A stretch of DNA of 63,761 nucleotides, filler included, from Octopus bimaculoides (Eukaryota), in assembly GCF_001194135.2 (NCBI RefSeq). It is 7 parts of 7 records of this genome, joined end to end, with 100 filler letters (N's around TTAATTAATTAA, not from the genome) between each part and the next. Parts side by side here need not be neighbours in the genome. Positions count along the whole stretch, not along the records: positions 36,774 to 47,300 come from NC_069004.1; 6 more parts are not named here. One strand, 5' to 3'. This document shows positions 36,801 to 47,300 of this stretch, one piece after another. The position numbers were made by a program, and so were the translations under genes. The notes beneath the pieces are model-generated. The model was not told where the DNA came from. It made no database searches and saw only the letters and a program-made list of their open reading frames with translations. The number at the start of each line of letters is the position of its first letter. Position 1 is the first letter of the stretch.

Positions 36801-37674
36801 ACTAGTAATTTGACTCCTGATAAGTTCACTCCCGGAAATTTCCGGAAATTTCACTCCTGATATTAAAAAAATAAATAAAACGTCAAATAAAGATAAAACA
36901 GAAAATACAGTAAAAAAATTAAAATATTAGCAAAAGCTTCAATAACGATGAAGGTTATGAGCTATTACTCGTAAAATATCCCATCCATCTTATTTTCGGG
37001 ACTATATCGCTCAGTAATTATCTGCAGCCGTTTGTTTATATCTTTATACAGTAATCCCTCTCCGTATAGCGGCTCACTTATCGCGGTTTATTATGTAAGC
37101 TTACATCGATTCTTCCGTGGTGTTGTTTTGTATTTATAATGAAATAAACATATACAAATTATAAAAATAATTTAAAAAATATATATACTGTTTCTACTTC
37201 GCGGATTTTCACCTATCATGGGGCGTTTTGGAACGTAAAACCCGCGATAGTCGAGGGATTACTGTACTTTTTTTTTTAGTTTCTCAGATCTCACCTCGAT
37301 CAAATTCAAACTTTCTCAGTTGTGCCGAGTGTTCTTCCCTTTTCAATGCAGTAATTAATTTCGATACGTTCGGAGATCTGCGAGACCAAAGAAAAGAAGA
37401 AAGATATAAACAAACGGCTGAAGAAAATAAGATGGATTTTTTTACGAAAATAAGATGGATTTTTTTACGAAAATAAAATGGATTTTTTTACGAGTAATAA
37501 ATAACTCATAACTTTATTGAAGCTTTTAGTAATATTTTAATATTTTACTATACTTTTTATTTTATCTTTATTTAATGTTTTATTTTGTTCTAATATCTGG
37601 AGTGAAATTACCAGGAGTAAAATTGACTGGCAGTCAAATTACCGGGAGTGAAATTACCAGAGTCAAATTAGAAC
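36801..37674. mobile_element. Foldback/MULE-like element with about 250 bp imperfect inverted arms
   Basis: Left arm TAATTTGACTC...GCCGTTTGTTTATATCTTT mirrors right arm AAAGATATAAACAAACGGC...GAGTCAAATTA; the right arm has a triplicated unit of about 23 bp (GAAAATAAGATGGATTTTTTTAC). Confidence 0.8.
37049..37264. mobile_element. pogo/Tigger-like MITE nested in the foldback element
   Basis: TA-CAGTAATCCCTC...GAGGGATTACTG-TA, perfect 12 bp TIR and TA duplication. Confidence 0.9.
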
Positions 37675-37857: not shown

Positions 37858-38075
37858 CCTGGGCAGCGAGCTGGCAGAATCGTTAGCATGCTGGGGCAAA
37901 ATGCTTAGCGGCATGTCATCTGTCTGAGTCCAAATTCTGAGTTCAGTTCTGAGTTCAAATTCCACCGGGGTCCCCTTTGCCTTTAATCCTTTCGGGGTCG
38001 ATAACAATAAGTACTAGGTGATTACTGGGGTCAGTGTAATCGACGTAAAATGCTGCTTTGAAATCGCTGGTCTTG
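37858..38075 (+). mobile_element. SINE family A
   Basis: GGCAGCGAGCTGGCAGAATCGTTAGC...GAGTTCAAATTCC...TCCTTTCGGGGTCGATA...ACTGGGGTC. Confidence 0.85.
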
Positions 38076-38383: not shown

Positions 38384-38567
38384 AGGTGGGCTTATCTACA
38401 GAGCATGTAAAGTAGATTTAAATGAGATGCTTACGGTTGTAGAGGTAGCGATTAATGCCCGGAATGAGAGCTTCAAATATCTACTTGAGAAACTTTATTT
38501 ACATATTGAAAAGAAAAATGGTTTATATCAGCAACAGGAGTCAGTTATTGAAGAGCATTTCAGAGAG
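38384..38567 (+). CDS. Unidentified alpha-helical/coiled-coil protein, exon A
   Basis: Pyrimidine tract plus TTTCAG acceptor (alternative AGs at 38360 and 38385); GGLIYRACKVDLNEMLTVVEVAINARNESFKYLLEKLYLHIEKKNGLYQQQESVIEEHFRE; phase-0 GTCAGT donor, in frame with exon B. Confidence 0.6.
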
Positions 38568-38797: not shown

Positions 38798-39090
38798 GTG
38801 AGGGCGCGTGGCTCAGCAGTTAGGATATTCGGCTCGCGACCTTAAAGGCGTGAGTTTGATTCCCGGCGGCGCGGTTGTTCCAGTCCAATCAGCTGGTAAA
38901 AATTATTAGTACTTGTGCTTCAAAGGGCCAATTCTGTCACATTCTGTGTCATGCTGAACCTCCCTGAGAACTACGTTAAGGGTGCACGTGTCTGTAGAGT
39001 ACTCAGCCACTAGCACACTACTTTCATGAGCAGATTGTTCCGTTGATCGGATCAACTGGAACACGCAATGTTATAACTAACGGAGTACCA
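38798..39090 (+). mobile_element. SINE family B, diverged
   Basis: tRNA-like head GGCGCGTGGCTCAGCAGTTAGG...CTCGCGAC...TTCCCGG, and body matching the reverse complement of 46285-46662. Confidence 0.85.
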
Positions 39091-39569
39091 GTTATGGATA
39101 GCCTTAGCCGAGAAAGGTAAATTAACTCGATAAAACATTTCCATGACGAAATGAAGGTGTGAGTCAGGATTGGAGTGGGTGGGGGGAGTAAGCCCTCTGA
39201 ACACCTACTGAAAGAGGCGCTCATCGTAATAAAGAGTGTAGGTCCCTAACAGAGCTGAAAAGCCACGTCTGTCTGTTCTGTTCTTGCTAAAGAGAACAAT
39301 CAAGTGATGGCATTGCTTGAAATTGGGTGGCAGCCATCAAGTATGTATAAATACATGTATTCGTATACACGGGGAACAATGTTATTTTTTTGTTTTATGC
39401 TTTACATTTCTGGAATTTTCATAATGCTATTTTCTTTATTTAAGCTAGTTTGAAACAATAAAGTCCCTAAATTCATATTCGACTTATCCAGACCTTCACC
39501 TCGAAGTTGATTTGGCGCCGGTGTCGTTTCATATACATTAGTTGAATTCACATAGACTTTTCCGACAGA

Positions 39570-40760
39570 CATTTTTTATTTGGCTTCTTTGTCAGCAGTC
39601 ACTATTGCCCACCTTCCTTTTTTCCCTTTTTTTCGAGGTCTCCACCTCCTCGACTGCCTCCATCTCTCCCTCCCTCCAAAGGAGGAGGGGATGCTACTTT
39701 TATTAACTGCTCCAGAACCCTACTTTGGTCCTGGGGACAGTTCTTCTTAATATGGCCCGGTTCCAGGCACAGATGACACTTGTGGGGGCGTCCCTCAAGT
39801 ATCACTGGGTACCTGCAACCGGTCATTTTCAAAAAATCTAGAAATACCAGATCTTTAGCGGCTGATTGGGTCCATAGGGTCAAAACAGCTTTTGACCCCN
39901 NNNNNNNNNNNNNNNNNNNNNNNNNNNNNNNNNNNNNNNNNNNNNNNNNNNNNNNNNNNNNNNNNNNNNNNNNNNNCACATTTAAAAGCTTGGGCCCACA
40001 ACCACCCAGACCCCGGCGGATAGTGTCCTCTATCCATTCCGGTTCAATGCCCGGTGGCAGCCCACAGACCCAAGCTCTTGTTCATTTCTTTCTACTATAT
40101 GTGGGAAGAAATAGAATCTTTTGCCCTTCTAATGGCTGGCTCGCATATTTGCGAGCCACCTCAGGGGTGTCAAATAGCAGCCACACCGTTGCATATCTAA
40201 CACCCCTAGAAATAAACTTAATAGTTGGCAGATGTTCTGCCAACTCTTTTTCTATTTCTGTCTTAGGAAAGATTGCGATGGTGTCGAGTGACTTAGAATA
40301 AGTCCTCAACACCACCGTTCTTTCCTCTAAGTTTTTTAGCCATTGATTGGGTGGGATGATTTTCCACTCCGATGCAGTGCTCAATTTCTTCGCCATGCTT
40401 TGAAGAAGTTTAGGAAACAGTTCAAAACAAAAGCCTAAACAAAGTCAAAAAACAGTTTGAAGGAAGACAAAGAAGATAAATAGAAAGAAGGAAGACAGTT
40501 CAAAACACGGCAACACACAATTCCGACCAACCGGTACTCCTGGTCAACAAGTACTCCAGAGGGTACTCCAAAAGCGAACAGGGACACAGTAGCAGGAATA
40601 CAGCTTCAAAAAAATCCACCACAAGTTAGTAAAAATTCAGAAAATATTTTCACAAAAAATTTCACAATTTTTGGAGGCGGGATACGCCCCCAAAACAGTA
40701 CTTTTCTCACAGCTAAGTGAGATAGCGCAACTATAGGCAGACAAATTCGCCGGAATCCAG
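39570..40760 (-). mobile_element. Second gag/ORF1-like zinc-knuckle element without polymerase
   Basis: T-rich 5' UTR with three GGAGTAC motifs; AAGCATGGCG start; MAKK..RTVVLRT..ATVWLLFDTPEVA..LPTY, then after a stop and a gap VILEGRPHKCHLCLEPGHIKKNC (CCHC); stop, then AATAAA about 20 nt later. Confidence 0.75.
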
Positions 40761-41062: not shown

Positions 41063-41220
41063 AGATCGATGGATAGATTGATGGATAGATTGATGGATAG
41101 ATCGATGGATAGATCGATGGATAGATCGATGGATAGATCGATGGTGGGGTGGATGGATGGATGGATGGATGGTCGGATGGATGAATGGATTGATGGATGG
41201 ATGAATAGATAGGTAGATGT
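41063..41220. repeat. 12 bp minisatellite (GATAGATCGATG)n grading into (GATG)n
   Basis: Direct inspection; about seven units. Confidence 0.9.
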
Positions 41221-41465
41221 ATATATAGATGGATAACTGGATGTGTGTGTACGTATGTCTGCGTTTATGCTTATCATCAGTTAAATATTCTTGTGTTTTG
41301 ATTACGTCCTCTGGTGCCGCACAACTTCAAATTCAACGAAAAAAGAACAATAAAATACATGAGACTGAAATCAATATCAAGGGAAGGGATTGCTCCAGCA
41401 TTGCTGCAGTTCAATGACTAAAACCAATAAAAAATAATGGAATTTATTTTAACTTTGTTTGACAG

Positions 41466-41561
41466 ATAAACAAACTCCAGGCCATTGCACGTCGGGTCAA
41501 AGACGAGAAAATAGAAGCAAAAGAATTATATGATTTAGACATTGCTAGCTTCAAAGCTCAG
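41466..41561 (+). CDS. Coiled-coil protein, exon B (96 nt, phase 0-0)
   Basis: TTTGACAG acceptor, INKLQAIARRVKDEKIEAKELYDLDIASFKAQ, GTAAGT donor. Confidence 0.7.
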
Positions 41562-41619
41562 GTAAGTAAATTTGGTTGCATTCATTTGAAAAATTTTTTA
41601 TTTCCATCAATCTTTCTAG

Positions 41620-44200
41620 ATGTCCAATAGCTGAGAGGATACGCCAGGGAGCTATTGACTATACTTATCTGTTCTTAACCCAAATTAAAATATTAATTTG
41701 CTCTTTTTTTTTCCTCACCTCGCTCTCCTGTTCTTGAACTGCAAATGTATAGCCTTCGAAGTAGCGGTCACGAGTCCAAGCAAGGCTTCACTTCATGTCA
41801 ATGTTACAATCTTCCTCAAGTCTACGAGAAACATACCCATGCATGGTCTTTTTTGGTACCTGAACGTTTCATCTCCAGGTCCTCTTTGAAGTATGCTAGT
41901 CCAGCTGACTTGGGGTTGTATAGGAGGTCATCAGGAAGAGAGTACTTCCTGAGGAGCTCACTTCCAACACGTAGGATATTACTTTCTTCACTTTTCAGCA
42001 CTACGTTTATGTATTTATATTTGCTGCTGTTGTTCAGCAAGTGCAGTCTGAGAGAGACTATGTGACATTCAAAGGCTGCATTGCTTTCAAGTCCCTACTT
42101 CCTTTATTTCTTCTTAGGTAGAACCTGTCGATATCACTATTTTTGCGGAGATTTCCAATTGATGTTAGAACCTTACGGGTTTTAATGTCTATGGAATGGA
42201 TTTCTTCTACAGACTAGTCAAGTATCCCAACTGTTGAAATTAGCACTGATACTGCAAATGCATTGTGGAATATTGTCTTGCTGTGAGAGGAGAGGTCAGA
42301 CTGCCATATTTTTCTTAGTCTGGTGTAATATTCCTAGGTCACTCTATCTTTATTCCCAGTACCTTGGTATGATATATTTTCATCAATGCTAAGATATTTG
42401 TAGCATTATTTATGTGGGGCAGAAGAGATAGTGAGACTATTGATGCACCGGTTGTATGTCAGAGGGAACTGATTTTCCCCGTTCAACAATTAAATAACAT
42501 CTCTTTTGGCCAAATTCGATTCCTATGTCAGCTGAAAATGGTGTTAAATCCAGTTGTTTTATTTTTTTATTCAGTTATTTATTGGTATTGTTAACATTCT
42601 TAGCATAAATCTTAAGGTTATTCACAAAACAATTAGGAGTTACATTAATGTCTCTTGCAGTTTCAGAACCCAGCGTGTAGTTATTTGGAGGGTTTCTTTT
42701 ATAGTGGGAATGATAATGGGTTTAACGCCAAGATGAACAGAAGTATAGAGAGACTATCACCCTGGAATATTCCCTTCGAAATATTTATGGCCTTGGAGAC
42801 GATCGTTCCACTCTCTGTTCTAAGTGTGAGGATTGTGGTCCAGGTCTTTGTGCGCCTGTCAATAACAGCAATTAAGGTAGCAGGCACTTTTGTCAAATGG
42901 AAACATTTCAGCAGCCATGAGTGGGGAATAGATTCAAATGCCTTCCTATAATCAAGCCATACTGTTGTACGGCTCCCATGATGTTTTTTTGTTTTGCTTT
43001 TGTTTTGTTACAGTACAGCTTTGTTTATCAGAAGTTGTTCGACACATCCCCGCACCCCTTCTTTCTTCATCAGTCGCTATGTTGTTGGAATCACAGTGAT
43101 CCTGGAGGAATTGGTTGAGGCAGCTTTTGTACAGTTTGTACATAATGTTTAAGTAAGCAATGGGCCTGTAGCTTTCAGACAACTCGGTTGGTTTCATTCT
43201 TGGCCACGAGATTCGTCCATATAATAGCAAGCCAATTTGATATGTCAATCTGAGCTTCCATAGTAATTTTGAATATATTAAGTGGCTTTCTATAAAATGT
43301 CAGCCTCTTATGCTAATATCCAGCTATTAGGGCCTTTCAATGTGCCTTCCCGTTACACAGTTTGCCTACAGCTATAAGTGAAAATTTCCGGGTCTATTGC
43401 CTATGTTTTACTGTTGATGTTGGTACAATATTCTCTCTTTACTGCATTTAGCCATGATGCATTGAGGTTGAAACTCCTCTTTTCGTTCCAGATTTTCAAC
43501 CAAAATGATTTAGCATCTTCTTGAGATGGGGCTTTCTTATTGGTAATATTTTCTTCCCTCATCTCTCCATATACTGTCTGTGGGTTAGCAACAAACTTGT
43601 GATATATGCAGACTTGTTCAAAAATTCGCTTGCGATAGGAAAGATTTTCGTTCAGAGCCCTGGGTGCATGTTTTAGAGTGATTAACCTTCCCTCAAGAGC
43701 TTGTTGTGGAGAGTCACCATACAGTTTTATTAATTTGTTTATTAAGATGTAACTGATGTGATGTGAGCTCATTGTTCCTCTTACATCTTATCATCGTGGT
43801 TAGCTATCTAATATGGCAGCGTAGTACTTTCATCACCATGTACACTGCAAATTTCTCCAAGGTGTTCTTTAAGAGTTATAGCAGCCGTGTATACGAGAGT
43901 ATTACTACTCCAGTAATTAACACCACATGATTCCATTTGCTCTGCAGCGACATCGTCGATAACTTTCAACATTAAAGCTGTTGGAAGTTTTCTTAATCTT
44001 GCTTAGAATGGCTTATTACTTAACGATAGTTTCGAAAAAGTAGGAAAAGAAGTAGACATTTCTAAAGTATTCTACAGTTGTCTTTTTTGGCTCGGCTACA
44101 TTTGGAGAGATACGAGAATTTAGAGATGACCGCAGTTTGTTTATATTATTTCCGATCTCTTTACTGGCAGGTTTTGACCAGTTCTGTGTTTTGAGAAGAT
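41620..44200 (-). mobile_element. R4/Dong-like non-LTR retrotransposon fossil (RT and flanking domains)
   Basis: NTLVYTAAIT, FWLKIWNE...NLNASWL, YRPIAYLNIMYKL, WIDYRKAFESIPHSWL, GIFQGDSLSILLFILALNPLS, degenerate YxDD (FVNNLK), EGYTFAVQEQE; many stops and frameshifts. Confidence 0.88.
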
Positions 44201-44555
44201 CGATTTACGTCATGACAGCATGTATGTATGCATGTATGTATGTATGAATGGATGTATGGATGGATGCATGCATGTATGTATGCATGCATGTATGTACGTA
44301 CTACGTATGTATGTATGTATGTATGTATGTATGTATGTACATGTGCTGTGATTACGCGGACCTAAAAATGACTGCCTCTATGCTGTCTCTTTCTCGCATA
44401 ACCTAGCTATTAAACAAAGAGTGGATAAATAATTAGTAGGCAGAAATATGTGCTAGGGTCTATTTGTATTCCCAAACCCTTGAAAACAGTCCCCCAGCAT
44501 AGCCATATTCCAATGACTGAAACCAATAAAAGAATAAAATGATTGACTTTGACAG

Positions 44556-44651
44556 ATATTGATACTTCAAGAACAAATTAGTCGAGTTAATACAAGAATA
44601 GAGGAAAATGAAACGAAAAGTAAAAATGAAATGAATATTCTTCAGCAAACG
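44556..44651 (+). CDS. Coiled-coil protein, exon C (96 nt, phase 0-0)
   Basis: TTTGACAG acceptor, ILILQEQISRVNTRIEENETKSKNEMNILQQT, GTAAGT donor. Confidence 0.7.
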
Positions 44652-45736
44652 GTAAGTCGGTTTAAATTCCCTTTTTTGTATCCCTATCAATCTACAAAGA
44701 AGTTGTGTTGTAATGAGGTTCAGTTACTTGTCTTCTAACTGCATTTACCTGCCCGCAACCCAAGTAACATTACCTCTTTATTCTTTATCTTGTTTACCAC
44801 AGAATATTTTGATGAACAAGCATGCTATAATGAATAAGTCCCAATCCTTAGTCACTGATATGTAGTTTCCTATAGTAAGGAGATTCAACTGCTGAACGTT
44901 CCAAGAAATAGGATGCAGTTTGTTTGTGAATTTTCCACTACGGGGTGTTCCACTTTCACAGCACGGGGTTACACAACACTTGGAGCAGTGAACTTCTCTT
45001 TACCTCCGGATTGATCAATACTTTGTGAGGAGAATTTCATCGATAGAAAAGGTGCAGATATCCTTTAAGTATCATATTCATAATCATAATCATTATATCT
45101 GCAATCCAAGCTGCATGAGTTAGATAAACCGTGGCTGTCCAATGTAGTTCATACGCTGTATTATAACCCTTCAAGATGCGTCAGAAAGCCATGATTCATA
45201 CGTTTCAGTTTTAATATGAATTACAAAGGACTGGAAGCATTTTTAAAACTCCAATCACTGTAGAAAATGTACCAAGTGCATCTTATTATGGCACCAGCGC
45301 AGTGAGCTAATCTTATGCCTTGTAAAAGTCATTATCACTTTGCAATGTCTTCATTTGTTATAAGCAGCGTGACCAAAAGGCGGGGATGCATGAGAGAGAG
45401 AGAGGAGATGGAGAGAGAGAATGAGAATGTGAAGATGAATGGAGTGAGAGAATATTAGGAGATATAAGGTAACTGGATTGAAAGGGTGGTACATGAGGAT
45501 AGTGACAGCACAAAATAGATGAGTAAAACAGAGATCACTTCGACATCTGACGTATGGCACACCGTGCACCTGTACAGGTAATGTCAAATTTGATGGAGGA
45601 AGTGAGATAATGAGCAGTACAAACATTTCATCGCTATAAACAAATCATCTGCACAGGTTGTTCAACAAGAAATTGCGGAATCGTCTTTCTAATCCTTGCG
45701 CCTGTGTGTGTTTGTGCGTTTGTGTGTGTGTATGTG

Positions 45737-45775
<39 letters not shown>

Positions 45776-46122
45776 GTGTGTGTGTAGGTGTGTGTGTATG
45801 TGTGTGTGTGTATGTATGTGTGTGAGTGAATGAGTGAGTGAGTGAGTGAGTGAGTGACTGAGTGACTGAGTGCGCATGCGCACATGTGATTATATTAACA
45901 TTGGCCAAAAACTGGTCTTGTCGTGTCCCTTGTTGTGTCCCTTTTTGGTTTGTAATCTAGTGAATCGACAAATAGTATTCGATAAAACATATTCCAGAGA
46001 TAAAGAAGTATTAGGGGGTCAATTTAATAGCCTAAACAGGCGTGGACAGTAAAACCCTACATATCTGTAATCCCATGACTAAAACTAGTAAAGAACAAAA
46101 GGTTTTATTTTAATTTTGGCAG

Positions 46123-46221
46123 ATAATAAAATGTCGATCTCATGTGGATATGCTCACTTCTGAGAAACAGAGAGCAGAGGAAACGATGAACGAGGGATTT
46201 GCGGTAGATACGAGAAGAGAG
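46123..46221 (+). CDS. Coiled-coil protein, exon D (99 nt, phase 0-0)
   Basis: TTTGGCAG acceptor, IIKCRSHVDMLTSEKQRAEETMNEGFAVDTRRE, GTAAGT donor. Confidence 0.7.
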
Positions 46222-46284
46222 GTAAGTAAATTTGGTTGCATTCATGTTTAAAACTTTTCCCGCTATCTTCCTACACGCATAATG

Positions 46285-46662
46285 TTGTTGTTGGCACTCC
46301 GTCGCTTACGACGTCGAGGGTTCCAGTTGATCCGATCAACGGAACAGCCTGCTCGTGAAATTAACGTGCAAGTGGCTGAGCACTCCAAAGACACGTCTAC
46401 CCTTAACGTAGTTCTCGGGGATATTCAGCGTGACACAGTGTGTCAAGGCTGACCCTTTGAATTACAGGCACAGCAGACACAGGAAGTAAGAGAAAGTTGT
46501 GGTGAAAGAGTACAGCAGGGTTCGCCACCATCCCCTGCCGGAGCCTCGTGGAGCTTTAGGTGTTTTCGCTCAATAAACACTCACAACGCCCGGTCTGGGA
46601 ATCGAAACCGCGATCCTATGACCGCGAGTCCACTGCCCTAACCACTGGGCCATTGCGCCTCC
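46285..46662 (-). mobile_element. Full-length tRNA-derived SINE family B with 12 bp TSD
   Basis: Minus-strand head GGAGGCGCAATGGCCCAGTGGTTAGGG...GGTTTCGATTCCC (A and B boxes), (CAA)n tail, TSD ACACGCATAATG at 46273-46284 and 46663-46674. Confidence 0.93.
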
Positions 46663-47129
46663 ACACGCATAATGAATGACAAGGTAAAGCACTATGCTGC
46701 AGAAAGCATTTAACTGGCCTCAGCTTGAATGACAACACCTCTTTTAGTGTTTTTGTTATTACTCTCCTCTTGGGTGAACGGTAAGAACTGTAATGTTAAA
46801 TTACTCAAATAAGCTGCATAGCCAGAAGCTCAAATCTATATTTATTGTGTTGCACACTCAGATAGAATATAAATAAGTAGTTTTAATGGGCAAACAACTT
46901 ATGACAAATAAGTTTCAGATCTGCCTTGCTGTTATTTGGTTTTCTGAAGTAATGAAACATAGTTGTGTCCAACAGAGTGCAAGTACAGATGTTCGCAACT
47001 ACGCGGTCCCACTTTCAATCCTACCGTGTGGCGTCCTAAGCACGGGATTTATGCTATCGCCTCCTTCGATTGACAAACAATTTGGATGGAAAATGTGCAG
47101 ATGTCTGGTGTGTGTGTTATTTCTTTACT

Positions 47130-47300
47130 ACCCACAAGGGGCTACACACAGTGGGGACAAACAAGGACAGACAAACGTAACTGGTACTTATTCAATCGAC
47201 CCCGAAAGGATGAAAGGCAAAGTCGACCTCGGCGGAATTTGAACTCAGAACGTAACGGCAGACGAAATACCGCTAAGCATTTCGCCCGGCGTGCTAACGT
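47130..47300 (-). mobile_element. SINE family A (alternative tail), cut by gap
   Basis: Reverse complement of the family A body. Confidence 0.88.

What the first reader, a model, noticed from the sequence alone, without database searches (positions are those of the whole stretch)
41380..46260. Triplicated SINE-tail plus exon cassette whose intron flanks are better conserved than its codons
Seen: exons B, C and D are all phase 0-0, 96/96/99 nt, start with ATA after a (G/A)CAG acceptor, and each is preceded within about 20-50 nt by the family C SINE tail (AATGACTAAAACCAATAAAA, AATGACTGAAACCAATAAAAG, CATGACTAAAACTAGTAAAG). B and D share 24 identical donor-side bases (GTAAGTAAATTTGGTTGCATTCAT) and a similar TTATTTTAA.TTT acceptor tract, yet their peptides share only about 6 of 32 residues. 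Inference: the coiled coil grew by tandem duplication of a SINE-anchored exon module (possibly SINE-mediated unequal recombination, with the tail supplying a branch-point-like CTRA), followed by accelerated coding divergence as in venom, immune or reproductive genes.
Basis: partly seen in the sequence, partly recalled or inferred. Interest (0 to 1): 0.7.

Follow-up and report, generated by a model that had tools for sequence, protein, structure and literature searches.

The report
Amplified SINE-plus-exon module, octopus CEP63-like gene
A 96-base exon of a fast-evolving octopus centrosome-protein-like (CEP63-like) gene was copied in tandem, together with a decayed SINE lying just upstream of it; its codons have since changed about twice as fast as the surrounding introns, a sign of positive selection.

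Summary
Exons B (41466-41561), C (44556-44651) and D (46123-46221) are CDS exons 3-5 of Octopus bimaculoides LOC106879378. Each lies 18-30 nt downstream of an old, same-orientation copy of one tRNA-derived SINE family (nhmmer E 1e-10 to 4e-18). B and D share 24/24 donor-side bases.

The tandem-duplication reading holds and extends. O. sinensis and O. vulgaris have four modules; the fourth in O. bimaculoides falls in an assembly gap just past the piece. A neighbouring paralogue also has four modules. A third paralogue has one, and it already carries the SINE. The Argonauta relative (Pfam CEP63) has one exon and no SINE.

So the SINE was a resident passenger copied with the exon. SINE-driven recombination is not shown.

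Accelerated coding evolution is supported. Between O. bimaculoides and O. sinensis dN/dS is 2.6 (4.3 for exons A-D), and exon divergence is 0.165 against 0.082 for introns.

The SINE tail is dispensable: it is lost at two modules whose exons remain intact. A tail-donor RNA stem was tested and rejected.

This is a new example of known processes, of moderate interest.

The parts
38384..38567 (+). Exon A (184 nt): CDS exon 2 of LOC106879378, encoding the CEP63-like N-terminal segment GGLIYRACKVDLNEML...
   Evidence: It is homologous to the first large exon of the paralogue, of gene 3 and of Argonauta CEP63-like.
41216..41435 (+). Old SINE copy of module B: internal microsatellite, body and tail (profile positions 166-412 of 416)
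   Evidence: nhmmer E 9.9e-11 (L001 17409-17628); local alignment above shuffles
41436..41465 (+). Linker and 3' splice tract of module B (aataatggaatttattttaactttgtttgacag)
   Evidence: Shared by all modules, mean pairwise identity 0.69
41466..41561 (+). Exon B, 96 nt, phase 0-0, INKLQAIARRVKDEKIEAKELYDLDIASFKAQ
41562..41625 (+). Donor flank of B: GTAAGTAAATTTGGTTGCATTCAT (identical in D) followed by ..TTTCCATCAATCTTTCTA
44286..44538 (+). Old SINE copy of module C (profile positions 177-416)
   Evidence: nhmmer E 4.3e-18 (L001 20479-20731); best non-self hit
44539..44555 (+). Linker and 3' splice tract of module C
44556..44651 (+). Exon C, 96 nt, phase 0-0, ILILQEQISRVNTRIEENETKSKNEMNILQQT
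44652..44715 (+). Donor flank of C (more diverged; keeps ..TATCCCTATCAATCTACAAAG)
45772..46098 (+). Old SINE copy of module D (profile positions 173-414)
   Evidence: nhmmer E 1.8e-12 (L001 21965-22291)
46099..46122 (+). Linker and 3' splice tract of module D (..ggttttattttaattttggcag)
46123..46221 (+). Exon D, 99 nt, phase 0-0, IIKCRSHVDMLTSEKQRAEETMNEGFAVDTRRE
46222..46284 (+). Donor flank of D (first 24 nt identical to B), cut off by a young inverted SINE insertion
46992..47064 (+). Head of the SINE of the fourth module (E). The rest of that module lies in the assembly gap after the piece.
   Evidence: nhmmer hit at L001 23185-23257 (E 0.005). It is orthologous to the SINE upstream of O. 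sinensis exon E through the collinear match L001 23089-23310 = L002 12930-13145. Gap at L001 23494-24636.

Best explanation
The piece is part of an Octopus bimaculoides gene (NCBI LOC106879378) for a CEP63-like, largely helical protein.

History, in order:
1. The ancestral gene had one 96-nt, phase-0 exon encoding 32 residues of the N-terminal helix.
2. A tRNA-derived SINE inserted about 25 nt upstream of that exon's acceptor.
3. The unit of SINE, short 3' splice tract, exon and about 60 nt of downstream intron was then amplified in tandem to four copies. B, C and D are in the piece. E is in an assembly gap in this genome but present in O. sinensis and O. vulgaris. The amplification adds 96 residues to the helix.
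4. The same four-module array is in the neighbouring paralogue LOC106878640. A third paralogue keeps a single module that already carries the SINE.

Since then the protein has been under recurrent positive selection. Non-synonymous sites change about twice as fast as introns and synonymous sites, so the codons of the copies are now almost unrecognisable.

The splice-proximal intron (pyrimidine tract and acceptor, and the donor to about +27) is held by ordinary splicing constraint. The CpG-poor SINE tail decays slowly and is a passenger.

Shown: the anatomy, the SINE identity, the shared origin of the modules, and dN/dS above 1.
Inferred: the order of events, the duplication mechanism, splicing constraint as the reason for flank conservation, and the protein's function.
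For: Gene identity:
- 100% match to P0001.
- Relatives P0002-P0005 were found by an exhaustive phmmer search. The paralogue scores E 2e-6 and Argonauta 'CEP63-like' E 4.5e-5.
- Pfam CEP63 (PF17045) scores 40.7 bits in Argonauta and 26.3 bits in the paralogue.
- Exon order is collinear across the relatives.
- The AlphaFold model is helical but of low confidence.

Module anatomy:
- All 96-nt exons of gene 1 (three species), the paralogue (two species) and gene 3 have the same SINE tail, linker and donor flank.
- nhmmer finds old + strand SINE copies ending 18-30 nt before the exons.
- The modules share substitutions against both young SINE subfamily copies.
- The linker and donor motifs occur nowhere else in about 200 kb of these loci.
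- The Argonauta exon has no SINE.

Selection:
- Gene 1, O. bimaculoides versus O. sinensis, 744 nt: dN 0.208, dS 0.079, omega 2.64, Fisher p 0.0015. For exons A-D omega is 4.3, p 0.0006.
- Exon p-distance is 0.165 against 0.082 for introns (5035 sites), p 4e-11.
- Non-synonymous sites against intron sites give p 5e-13. In gene 2 pN is 0.137 against 0.079 for introns, p 7.5e-6.

Flank profile: SINE body 0.46-0.56, tail 0.64, linker 0.69, exon 0.48, donor 0.68, +28..+62 0.52.
Against: - No transcript data were available. Splicing rests on gene models from NCBI and from the O. vulgaris annotation, and these disagree on which repeat exons are included.
- The SINE tail is somewhat better kept than the SINE body even at non-CpG sites (0.71 against 0.59). 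Some function of the tail is therefore not excluded.
- The perfect 24/24 identity of the B and D donor flanks is more than generic 5' splice-site constraint explains. Synonymous sites of B and D are saturated.
- Trees of the modules are unresolved apart from orthologue pairs. The order of amplification and gene duplication is therefore inferred only from copy numbers and a few shared characters.
- P0001-P0003 themselves do not hit Pfam CEP63.
- dN/dS used the Nei-Gojobori method on short sequences.
Confidence: 0.8

Rival explanations
1. The conserved flanks are functional splicing-control elements. In this reading the four phase-0 exons are cassette exons included in different combinations to set the length of the coiled coil. 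The extended donor motif, and perhaps the ACTRAAAC block of the SINE tail acting as a branch point, regulate that choice.
For: - All copies are phase 0-0, so any subset keeps the reading frame.
- Gene models differ in which repeats they include. P0002 joins A-B and then skips to exon G, P0006 uses only R2, P0007 starts at R3, and P0001, P0003 and P0004 include all repeats.
- The proximal flanks are better kept than the distal intron and the exon.
- ATGACTRAAAC is the best-kept block of the tail and lies 35-44 nt from the acceptors (coordinates).
- B and D share 24/24 donor bases in all three species.
Against: - The tail is lost at B in O. sinensis and O. vulgaris, and at R2 in O. vulgaris, with the exons intact. 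R2 is even the one repeat kept in the O. vulgaris model.
- Tail-to-donor base pairing is no better than shuffled controls.
- Differences between gene models may be annotation noise.
- No expression data were available.
Confidence: 0.2
2. The flank similarity is kept by gene conversion (concerted evolution) between modules, while selection for diversity keeps the exons different.
For: The B and D donor flanks are identical over 24 nt, although B is otherwise closest to paralogue exon R1. Flank-only and exon-only trees disagree.
Against: - The conserved stretches are short and lie on both sides of a diverged 96-nt exon, whereas conversion tracts are contiguous.
- The same motifs are kept in paralogues tens of kilobases away and in the single-copy gene 3.
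- The B/D donor sequence is unchanged in three species, which looks like stasis rather than recent exchange.
Confidence: 0.1
3. The three SINE tails are independent insertions of an abundant SINE near three exons, and the resemblance of the flanks is due to the SINE alone.
For: SINEs make up about 11.6% of the O. vulgaris genome (PMC13282606). Dozens of copies lie in these loci.
Against: - Position and orientation are the same in at least 8 modules.
- Homology continues past the SINE end into the linker, the exon and about 60 nt of downstream intron, none of which is in the SINE consensus.
- The modules share substitutions against young SINE copies.
Confidence: 0.03
4. The exons are not real. 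In this reading LOC106879378 is a spurious or dead gene model built on repeats.
For: - The NCBI model is truncated.
- Its last exon (TILFRPYFSIARPYPRY) has no counterpart in other species.
- Pfam finds nothing in it.
- No literature mentions it.
Against: - Open frames and GT-AG sites are kept in three species.
- The gene continues collinearly into exons F, G and H beyond assembly gaps.
- It is related to a bona fide CEP63-family protein.
- A pseudogene would give dN about equal to dS and to the intron rate, not dN twice the intron rate.
Confidence: 0.05

Closest known systems
Alu/Alu-mediated (SINE-mediated) intragenic tandem duplication of exons in humans (for example PMC6071635, PMC13041450)
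   Same: A short interspersed element heads every copy of an exon-containing unit that is repeated head to tail inside one gene.
   Different: Here no SINE of matching age is seen at the far end of the array, and no hybrid SINE can be recognised. The SINE was already next to the exon in a single-copy paralogue. The event is ancient, fixed and in frame, and it lengthens a helix rather than causing disease.
Tandem duplicated exons used as mutually exclusive or substitution exons (PMC9741552, PMC8373072)
   Same: Neighbouring homologous exons of equal length and phase, with conserved splice-proximal intron sequence.
   Different: The annotated mRNAs string the copies in series. Phase 0-0 lets all be included. 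No competing RNA pairing was found.
CEP63 / Deup1 family (Pfam PF17045). In vertebrates Cep63 was duplicated to give Deup1 (my own knowledge: Zhao et al. 2013).
   Same: The N-terminal domain and exon order are related to CEP63-family proteins. There has been lineage-specific gene duplication: three tandem genes in Octopus.
   Different: The octopus genes fall below Pfam's threshold, carry a fourfold-repeated 32-residue segment, and evolve with dN/dS above 1. Localisation and binding partners are unknown.
Genes whose introns are better conserved than their coding exons under accelerated evolution: snake venom PLA2 genes and conotoxin genes (my own knowledge: Nakashima et al. 1993/1995; Olivera et al. 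1999)
   Same: Non-synonymous change exceeds synonymous and intron change, and the flanking introns remain alignable.
   Different: The product here is an intracellular coiled-coil-type protein, not a secreted toxin. The selective agent is unknown.

Membership tests
Tandem exon duplication (internal repeat growth of a gene) | Adjacent exons of the same length and phase | tested here: met
   96/96/99 nt (plus 96 nt for exon E), all phase 0-0
Tandem exon duplication (internal repeat growth of a gene) | Sequence homology of the exons and of their flanking intron sequence | tested here: met
   In-register identity of 8 modules is 0.475, against a maximum of 0.333 for shifted registers. Linker, donor flank and SINE are shared.
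SINE-mediated non-allelic recombination as the cause of the duplication | Direct-orientation SINE copies of matching age at both ends of the duplicated unit or array | tested here: inconclusive
   Every unit begins with an old SINE. Downstream of the last exon only a clearly younger SINE head is found, and none is found within 300 nt after B, C or D.
SINE-mediated non-allelic recombination as the cause of the duplication | Hybrid SINE at the junction | not testable with these tools
   The copies are about 40% diverged from the consensus, and no subfamily markers are left to phase.
SINE exonisation | Exon sequence or splice sites derived from the SINE itself | tested here: not met
   The SINE profile ends 18-30 nt before the acceptor. 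The exon is homologous to the SINE-free Argonauta CEP63-like exon.
Mutually exclusive exon cluster with competing RNA structures | Only one copy included per mRNA | tested here: not met
   Models P0001, P0003 and P0004 contain the copies in series. This is annotation-level evidence only.
Mutually exclusive exon cluster with competing RNA structures | Complementary docking and selector sequences in the flanks | tested here: not met
   Duplex energies of tail against donor flank give z from -1.1 to +1.0 relative to shuffles in 10 modules.
CEP63 family (PF17045) | Match to the Pfam model above its gathering score | tested here: not met
   P0001-P0003 have no hit. The paralogue P0004 scores 26.3 bits, below the cut-off of 33. 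Only Argonauta P0005 passes, at 40.7 bits.
CEP63 family (PF17045) | Significant sequence relationship to family members, with collinear exon structure | tested here: met
   phmmer against 1.84 bn proteins gives P0004 E 2e-6 and P0005 E 4.5e-5. Shared A-like exon, 96-nt exon, F-like exon and ECExQL exon.
CEP63 family (PF17045) | Centrosomal localisation and CEP152/CEP57 binding | not testable with these tools
   No experimental data. No paper mentions these loci.
Positively selected gene | Non-synonymous rate above the neutral rate between orthologues | tested here: met
   omega 2.64 (p 0.0015). pN 0.182 against intron 0.082 (p 5e-13). Gene 2 pN 0.137 against intron 0.079 (p 7.5e-6).

The most novel reading that the evidence does not exclude
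The four phase-0, 96-nt exons with their conserved flanks may form a combinatorial cassette system. It would set the length of the N-terminal helix of a CEP63-like protein in steps of 32 residues. An exapted SINE tail and an extended donor motif would act as splicing-control elements. The whole three-gene cluster would be driven by an evolutionary conflict, for example in the male germ line or in centriole inheritance.
Probability: 0.15. Interest if true: 0.7.

Novelty: new member of a known kind. Interest (0 to 1): 0.45.

Why it matters
- It is a clean, datable example of how a coiled-coil protein grows by in-frame exon amplification. A resident SINE serves as a built-in marker showing that the copies share one origin.
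- It uncovers an undescribed tandem cluster of three CEP63-like genes in Octopus whose coding sequence evolves faster than its introns. That points to an unknown selective pressure on a centrosome-related protein in cephalopods.
- It shows that the current NCBI model of LOC106879378 is truncated by assembly gaps.
- The individual processes (exon duplication, SINE hitch-hiking, positive selection) are all well known.

Tried and rejected
1. RNA stem between the SINE tail and the donor flank. By eye, AATGA..AACCAA pairs with TTGGTT..TCATT in B, and D appeared to have a compensatory CATGA/TCATG. Duplex energies in 10 modules are no better than shuffles, so this was rejected.

2. Donor flank as an inverted SINE-tail fragment, or as the decayed head of the next SINE. 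nhmmer at maximum sensitivity on 300 nt downstream of every exon finds a SINE head only after E. That copy is young.

3. Homology between modules beyond +62 or upstream of the SINE. All-against-all blastn of the introns found only the proximal flanks, dispersed repeats and one B/R1 element. The ends of the duplicated unit remain undefined.

4. Trees of exons, flanks or both, to order the duplications. They are unresolved except for orthologue pairs.

5. dN/dS between B, C and D. Synonymous sites are saturated.

6. Pfam on P0001-P0003 found nothing. Rfam found only sub-threshold hits driven by microsatellites. No tRNA genes were found.

7. Literature searches for the locus names and for CEP63 in octopus found nothing.

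8. AlphaFold without an alignment gave only a low-confidence helical model, pLDDT 58. It was not used for fold search.

9. CpG decay as the sole reason the tail is better kept than the SINE body. It explains only part: at non-CpG sites the tail is 0.71 and the body 0.59.


Full report
**What the piece is.** The 10.5-kb piece is AT-rich eukaryotic DNA full of microsatellites and SINE-like repeats. The joined translation of four candidate exons is 100% identical to an NCBI protein: 'uncharacterized protein LOC106879378' of Octopus bimaculoides, P0001, 192 aa. The four exons are:

| Exon | Window coordinates |
|---|---|
| A | 38384-38567 |
| B | 41466-41561 |
| C | 44556-44651 |
| D | 46123-46221 |

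The gene lies on chromosome record CM046624.1. I fetched 38 kb around it as L001; window coordinate = L001 coordinate + 23807.

**Check of the observation.** All stated features are present.
- Lengths are 96/96/99 nt and all three exons are phase 0-0.
- Each starts with ATA after (G/A)CAG and is followed by GTAAGT.
- A three-member repeat family lies upstream at 41395-41432, 44494-44531 and 46056-46093.
- B and D share 24/24 donor-side bases, found nowhere else in L001, and 90% identity over 39 nt.
- The B and D peptides share 6/32 residues.

**The repeat is a SINE, and the whole SINE is there.**
- A complete young copy lies at L001 30079-30495. It has a tRNA-like head, an internal (TATG/GT)n microsatellite, a body, and the tail ..CCAGCATGGCCGCAGTCAAATGACTGAAACAAGTAAAAG.
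- A profile from 10 young copies finds old copies in the + orientation immediately upstream of B, C and D: window 41216-41435 (E 1e-10), 44286-44538 (E 4e-18) and 45772-46098 (E 2e-12). Each runs from the microsatellite to the tail and ends 18-30 nt before the exon (independent check).
- The microsatellites upstream of each exon are therefore the SINE's internal microsatellite.

**Relatives.** An exhaustive phmmer search found only four relatives:

| Protein | Species | Note |
|---|---|---|
| P0002 | O. vulgaris | orthologue model |
| P0003 | O. sinensis | orthologue model, labelled 'RB1CC1-like' |
| P0004 | O. bimaculoides | paralogue LOC106878640, about 26 kb downstream on the same chromosome |
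| P0005 | Argonauta hians | 'CEP63-like' |

- Pfam CEP63 (PF17045) scores 40.7 bits in Argonauta, above its cut-off of 33. It scores 26.3 bits in the paralogue, and nothing in gene 1 itself.
- Exon order is collinear across all of them.
- A profile search added the paralogue's models in O. vulgaris and O. sinensis. The O. vulgaris model is fused to a third CEP63-like gene further downstream.
- A single-sequence AlphaFold model of P0001 is helical (H12-41, H45-91, H97-166) but of low confidence, pLDDT 58.

**The array is fourfold and older than the species.**
- O. sinensis and O. vulgaris have exons B, C and D plus a fourth 96-nt exon E (AKKLQSRVREIAKKKQEIEKLHVMQMKVFKTN).
- In O. bimaculoides, E falls in the N gap at L001 23494-24636, which begins exactly where the piece ends.
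- The head of E's SINE is still visible at window 46992-47064.
- Exon F starts at L001 26988 and runs into a second gap. Exons G and H follow at L001 29770 and 33546.
- The NCBI model is therefore truncated, and its last exon is probably spurious.

**Every module has the same anatomy.** The pattern holds in gene 1 (B-E), in the paralogue (R1-R4, in two species) and in the single 96-nt exon of gene 3. Each has, in order:
- the SINE tail;
- a linker such as GAATTTATTTTAACTTTGTTTGACAG;
- the exon;
- a donor flank GTAAGTAAATTTGGTNNNATTCAT;
- often ..TTCCCATCAATCTTTCTA at about +40 to +60.

Further points:
- nhmmer detects the old SINE upstream of E, R1, R2, R3 and the gene-3 exon as well.
- The linker and donor motifs occur nowhere else in about 200 kb of these loci.
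- The modules share changes against both young SINE variants, for example TTCGGCAAAAG to TTCAACAAAGA in seven modules.
- The Argonauta exon has no SINE and no such flanks.

Independent insertion is therefore excluded. One SINE inserted about 25 nt upstream of the acceptor and was copied with the exon.

Gene 3 has a single module that already carries the SINE, and no further candidate exon was found in its introns. The SINE therefore predates the amplification.

**Was the SINE the cause?** This is not shown.
- Only exon E is followed within 300 nt by a SINE head. That copy is much less decayed than the module SINEs.
- No homology between modules was found beyond about +62 or upstream of the SINE, so the ends of the duplicated unit are unknown.
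- Unequal exchange between SINEs, as in human Alu/Alu rearrangements (PMC6071635, PMC13041450), remains possible but is only an inference.

**Flanks against codons.** Mean pairwise identity among eight modules:

| Region | Identity |
|---|---|
| SINE body | 0.46-0.56 |
| SINE tail | 0.64 |
| Linker | 0.69 |
| Exon | 0.48 |
| Donor +7..+27 | 0.68 |
| +28..+62 | 0.52 |

- By codon position, exon identity is 0.41, 0.53 and 0.49.
- The exons are still demonstrably homologous: in-register identity is 0.475, against at most 0.333 for shifted registers.
- Between B, C and D synonymous sites are saturated, with pS 0.73-0.79.

**Accelerated coding evolution.**
- The O. bimaculoides and O. sinensis loci are collinear, and introns differ at 8.2% of 5035 aligned sites.
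- The seven comparable exons (744 nt) give dN 0.208, dS 0.079 and omega 2.64 (Fisher p 0.0015). Exons A-D give omega 4.3 (p 0.0006).
- Exon p-distance is 0.165 against 0.082 for introns (p 4e-11).
- Non-synonymous sites against intron sites give p 5e-13.
- dS equals the intron rate, so the excess is specific to non-synonymous sites. That argues against pseudogene decay and against gene conversion from diverged copies.
- The paralogue (O. bimaculoides versus O. vulgaris) gives omega 1.34, which is not significant. Its pN of 0.137 still exceeds its intron rate of 0.079 (p 7.5e-6).

**Is the tail functional?**
- ATGACTRAAAC is the best-kept block of the tail and lies 35-44 nt from the acceptors, which is compatible with a branch point.
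- However, the tail has been replaced by a microsatellite upstream of B in O. sinensis and O. vulgaris. It is also gone upstream of R2 in O. vulgaris. Both exons remain intact and annotated.
- CpG decay explains part of the difference between tail and body. Identity to the consensus at non-CpG sites is 0.71 in the tail and 0.59 in the body.
- A stem between tail and donor flank, which looked attractive by eye, is no better than shuffles.
- My reading is that the tail is a slowly decaying passenger, with weak constraint not excluded. The linker and donor region are kept by splicing. The perfect B/D donor identity remains unexplained.

**Age (rough inference).**
- PMC13282606 equates Jukes-Cantor distances of 0.065 and 0.2 with 18 and 56 My. 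It quotes 13-33 My for the O. vulgaris / O. bimaculoides split.
- The intron distance found here (about 0.087) fits the lower end of that range.
- The module SINEs are 29-41% diverged from the consensus at non-CpG sites. This suggests an insertion of the order of 100 My ago.
- Module trees are unresolved.
- B and R1 share an extra intronic element. E and R4 share GGTGGAATT donor flanks and a ..FKT[NK] exon end. These characters favour a four-copy array in the common ancestor of genes 1 and 2.

**Verdict.** The SINE as driver and as branch point is not supported. This is a new example of known processes in an undescribed, rapidly evolving CEP63-like gene cluster, of moderate interest.

Noticed in passing
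window 46285-46662 (- strand); target-site duplications at 46273-46284 and 46663-46674: A young tRNA-derived SINE of a different family is inserted in inverse orientation 63 nt after exon D. It is flanked by a perfect 12-nt duplication, ACACGCATAATG. O. sinensis and O. vulgaris have the empty site (..cctacacgcgtaatgaatgacaag..), so the insertion is specific to the O. bimaculoides lineage. An older inverted partner lies at 38939-39090 (inverted repeat I1).
   Followed up: yes
window 41863-44450 (L001 18056-20643): The B-C intron is 2994 nt here but only 412 nt in O. sinensis and O. vulgaris. The extra stretch holds reverse-transcriptase-like ORF fragments on the - strand (weak RVT_1, weak Tc5 HTH) and the 5' two-thirds of module C's SINE. 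The other two species therefore have a deletion that truncated that SINE.
   Followed up: partly
window 41614-41690; L003 14266-14375: An intronic element, TAGATGTCCAATAGCTGAGAGGATACGCC..GAGCTATTGACTATA..CCCAAAT, lies 52-125 nt after exon B. It is about 88% identical over 74 nt to a stretch in the intron after paralogue exon R1, although those exons are only 57% identical. It is not found elsewhere in the fetched loci. It could be a conserved non-coding element or an old shared insertion.
   Followed up: partly
L001 23494-24636 and 27012-27322 (just beyond the piece); L001 27977-28033: The NCBI model LOC106879378 is truncated. Exon E is hidden in one assembly gap, and exon F (INRLKTVY.., from L001 26988) runs into another. 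The model's terminal exon (TILFRPYFSIARPYPRY) has no counterpart in other species. Exons G and H lie further downstream.
   Followed up: yes
L006 35776-44080 (O. vulgaris): A third CEP63-like gene lies in tandem and is fused into the O. vulgaris model P0006. It has a single 96-nt repeat exon (39262-39357), which already carries the old SINE and the donor motif.
   Followed up: partly
L002 9900-9975 and L004 17730-17810: Upstream of exon B in O. sinensis and O. vulgaris, the SINE tail is replaced by an (AT)n/(GGATATA)n microsatellite, while the 3' splice tract is unchanged. Likewise the SINE upstream of paralogue exon R2 is absent in O. vulgaris (L006, before 9208).
   Followed up: yes
window 39602-40400 (- strand), N gap 39900-39976: A retroelement remnant lies in the A-B intron, with a CCHC zinc-knuckle ORF (Pfam zf-CCHC, 20.1 bits) interrupted by an assembly gap.
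   Followed up: partly
window 36817-37661: A foldback or MITE-like element with long imperfect terminal inverted repeats (inverted repeats I3-I6, I9, I13 and I14, with arms at about 36817-36984 and 37478-37661). It contains a 23-nt unit repeated three times at 37423-37493.
   Followed up: no
window 37866-38048 (+) and 47117-47299 (-): Two copies of yet another SINE family lie in inverse orientation about 9 kb apart (inverted repeats I2 and I8), bracketing exons A-D. Further copies are in the O. sinensis locus.
   Followed up: no
window 44207-44353: Sub-threshold Rfam 'miRNA' hits (mir-297, mir-3149, mir-1277, mir-466) fall on the (ATGT)n microsatellite of module C's SINE. They are composition artefacts, far below the gathering scores.
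   Followed up: yes
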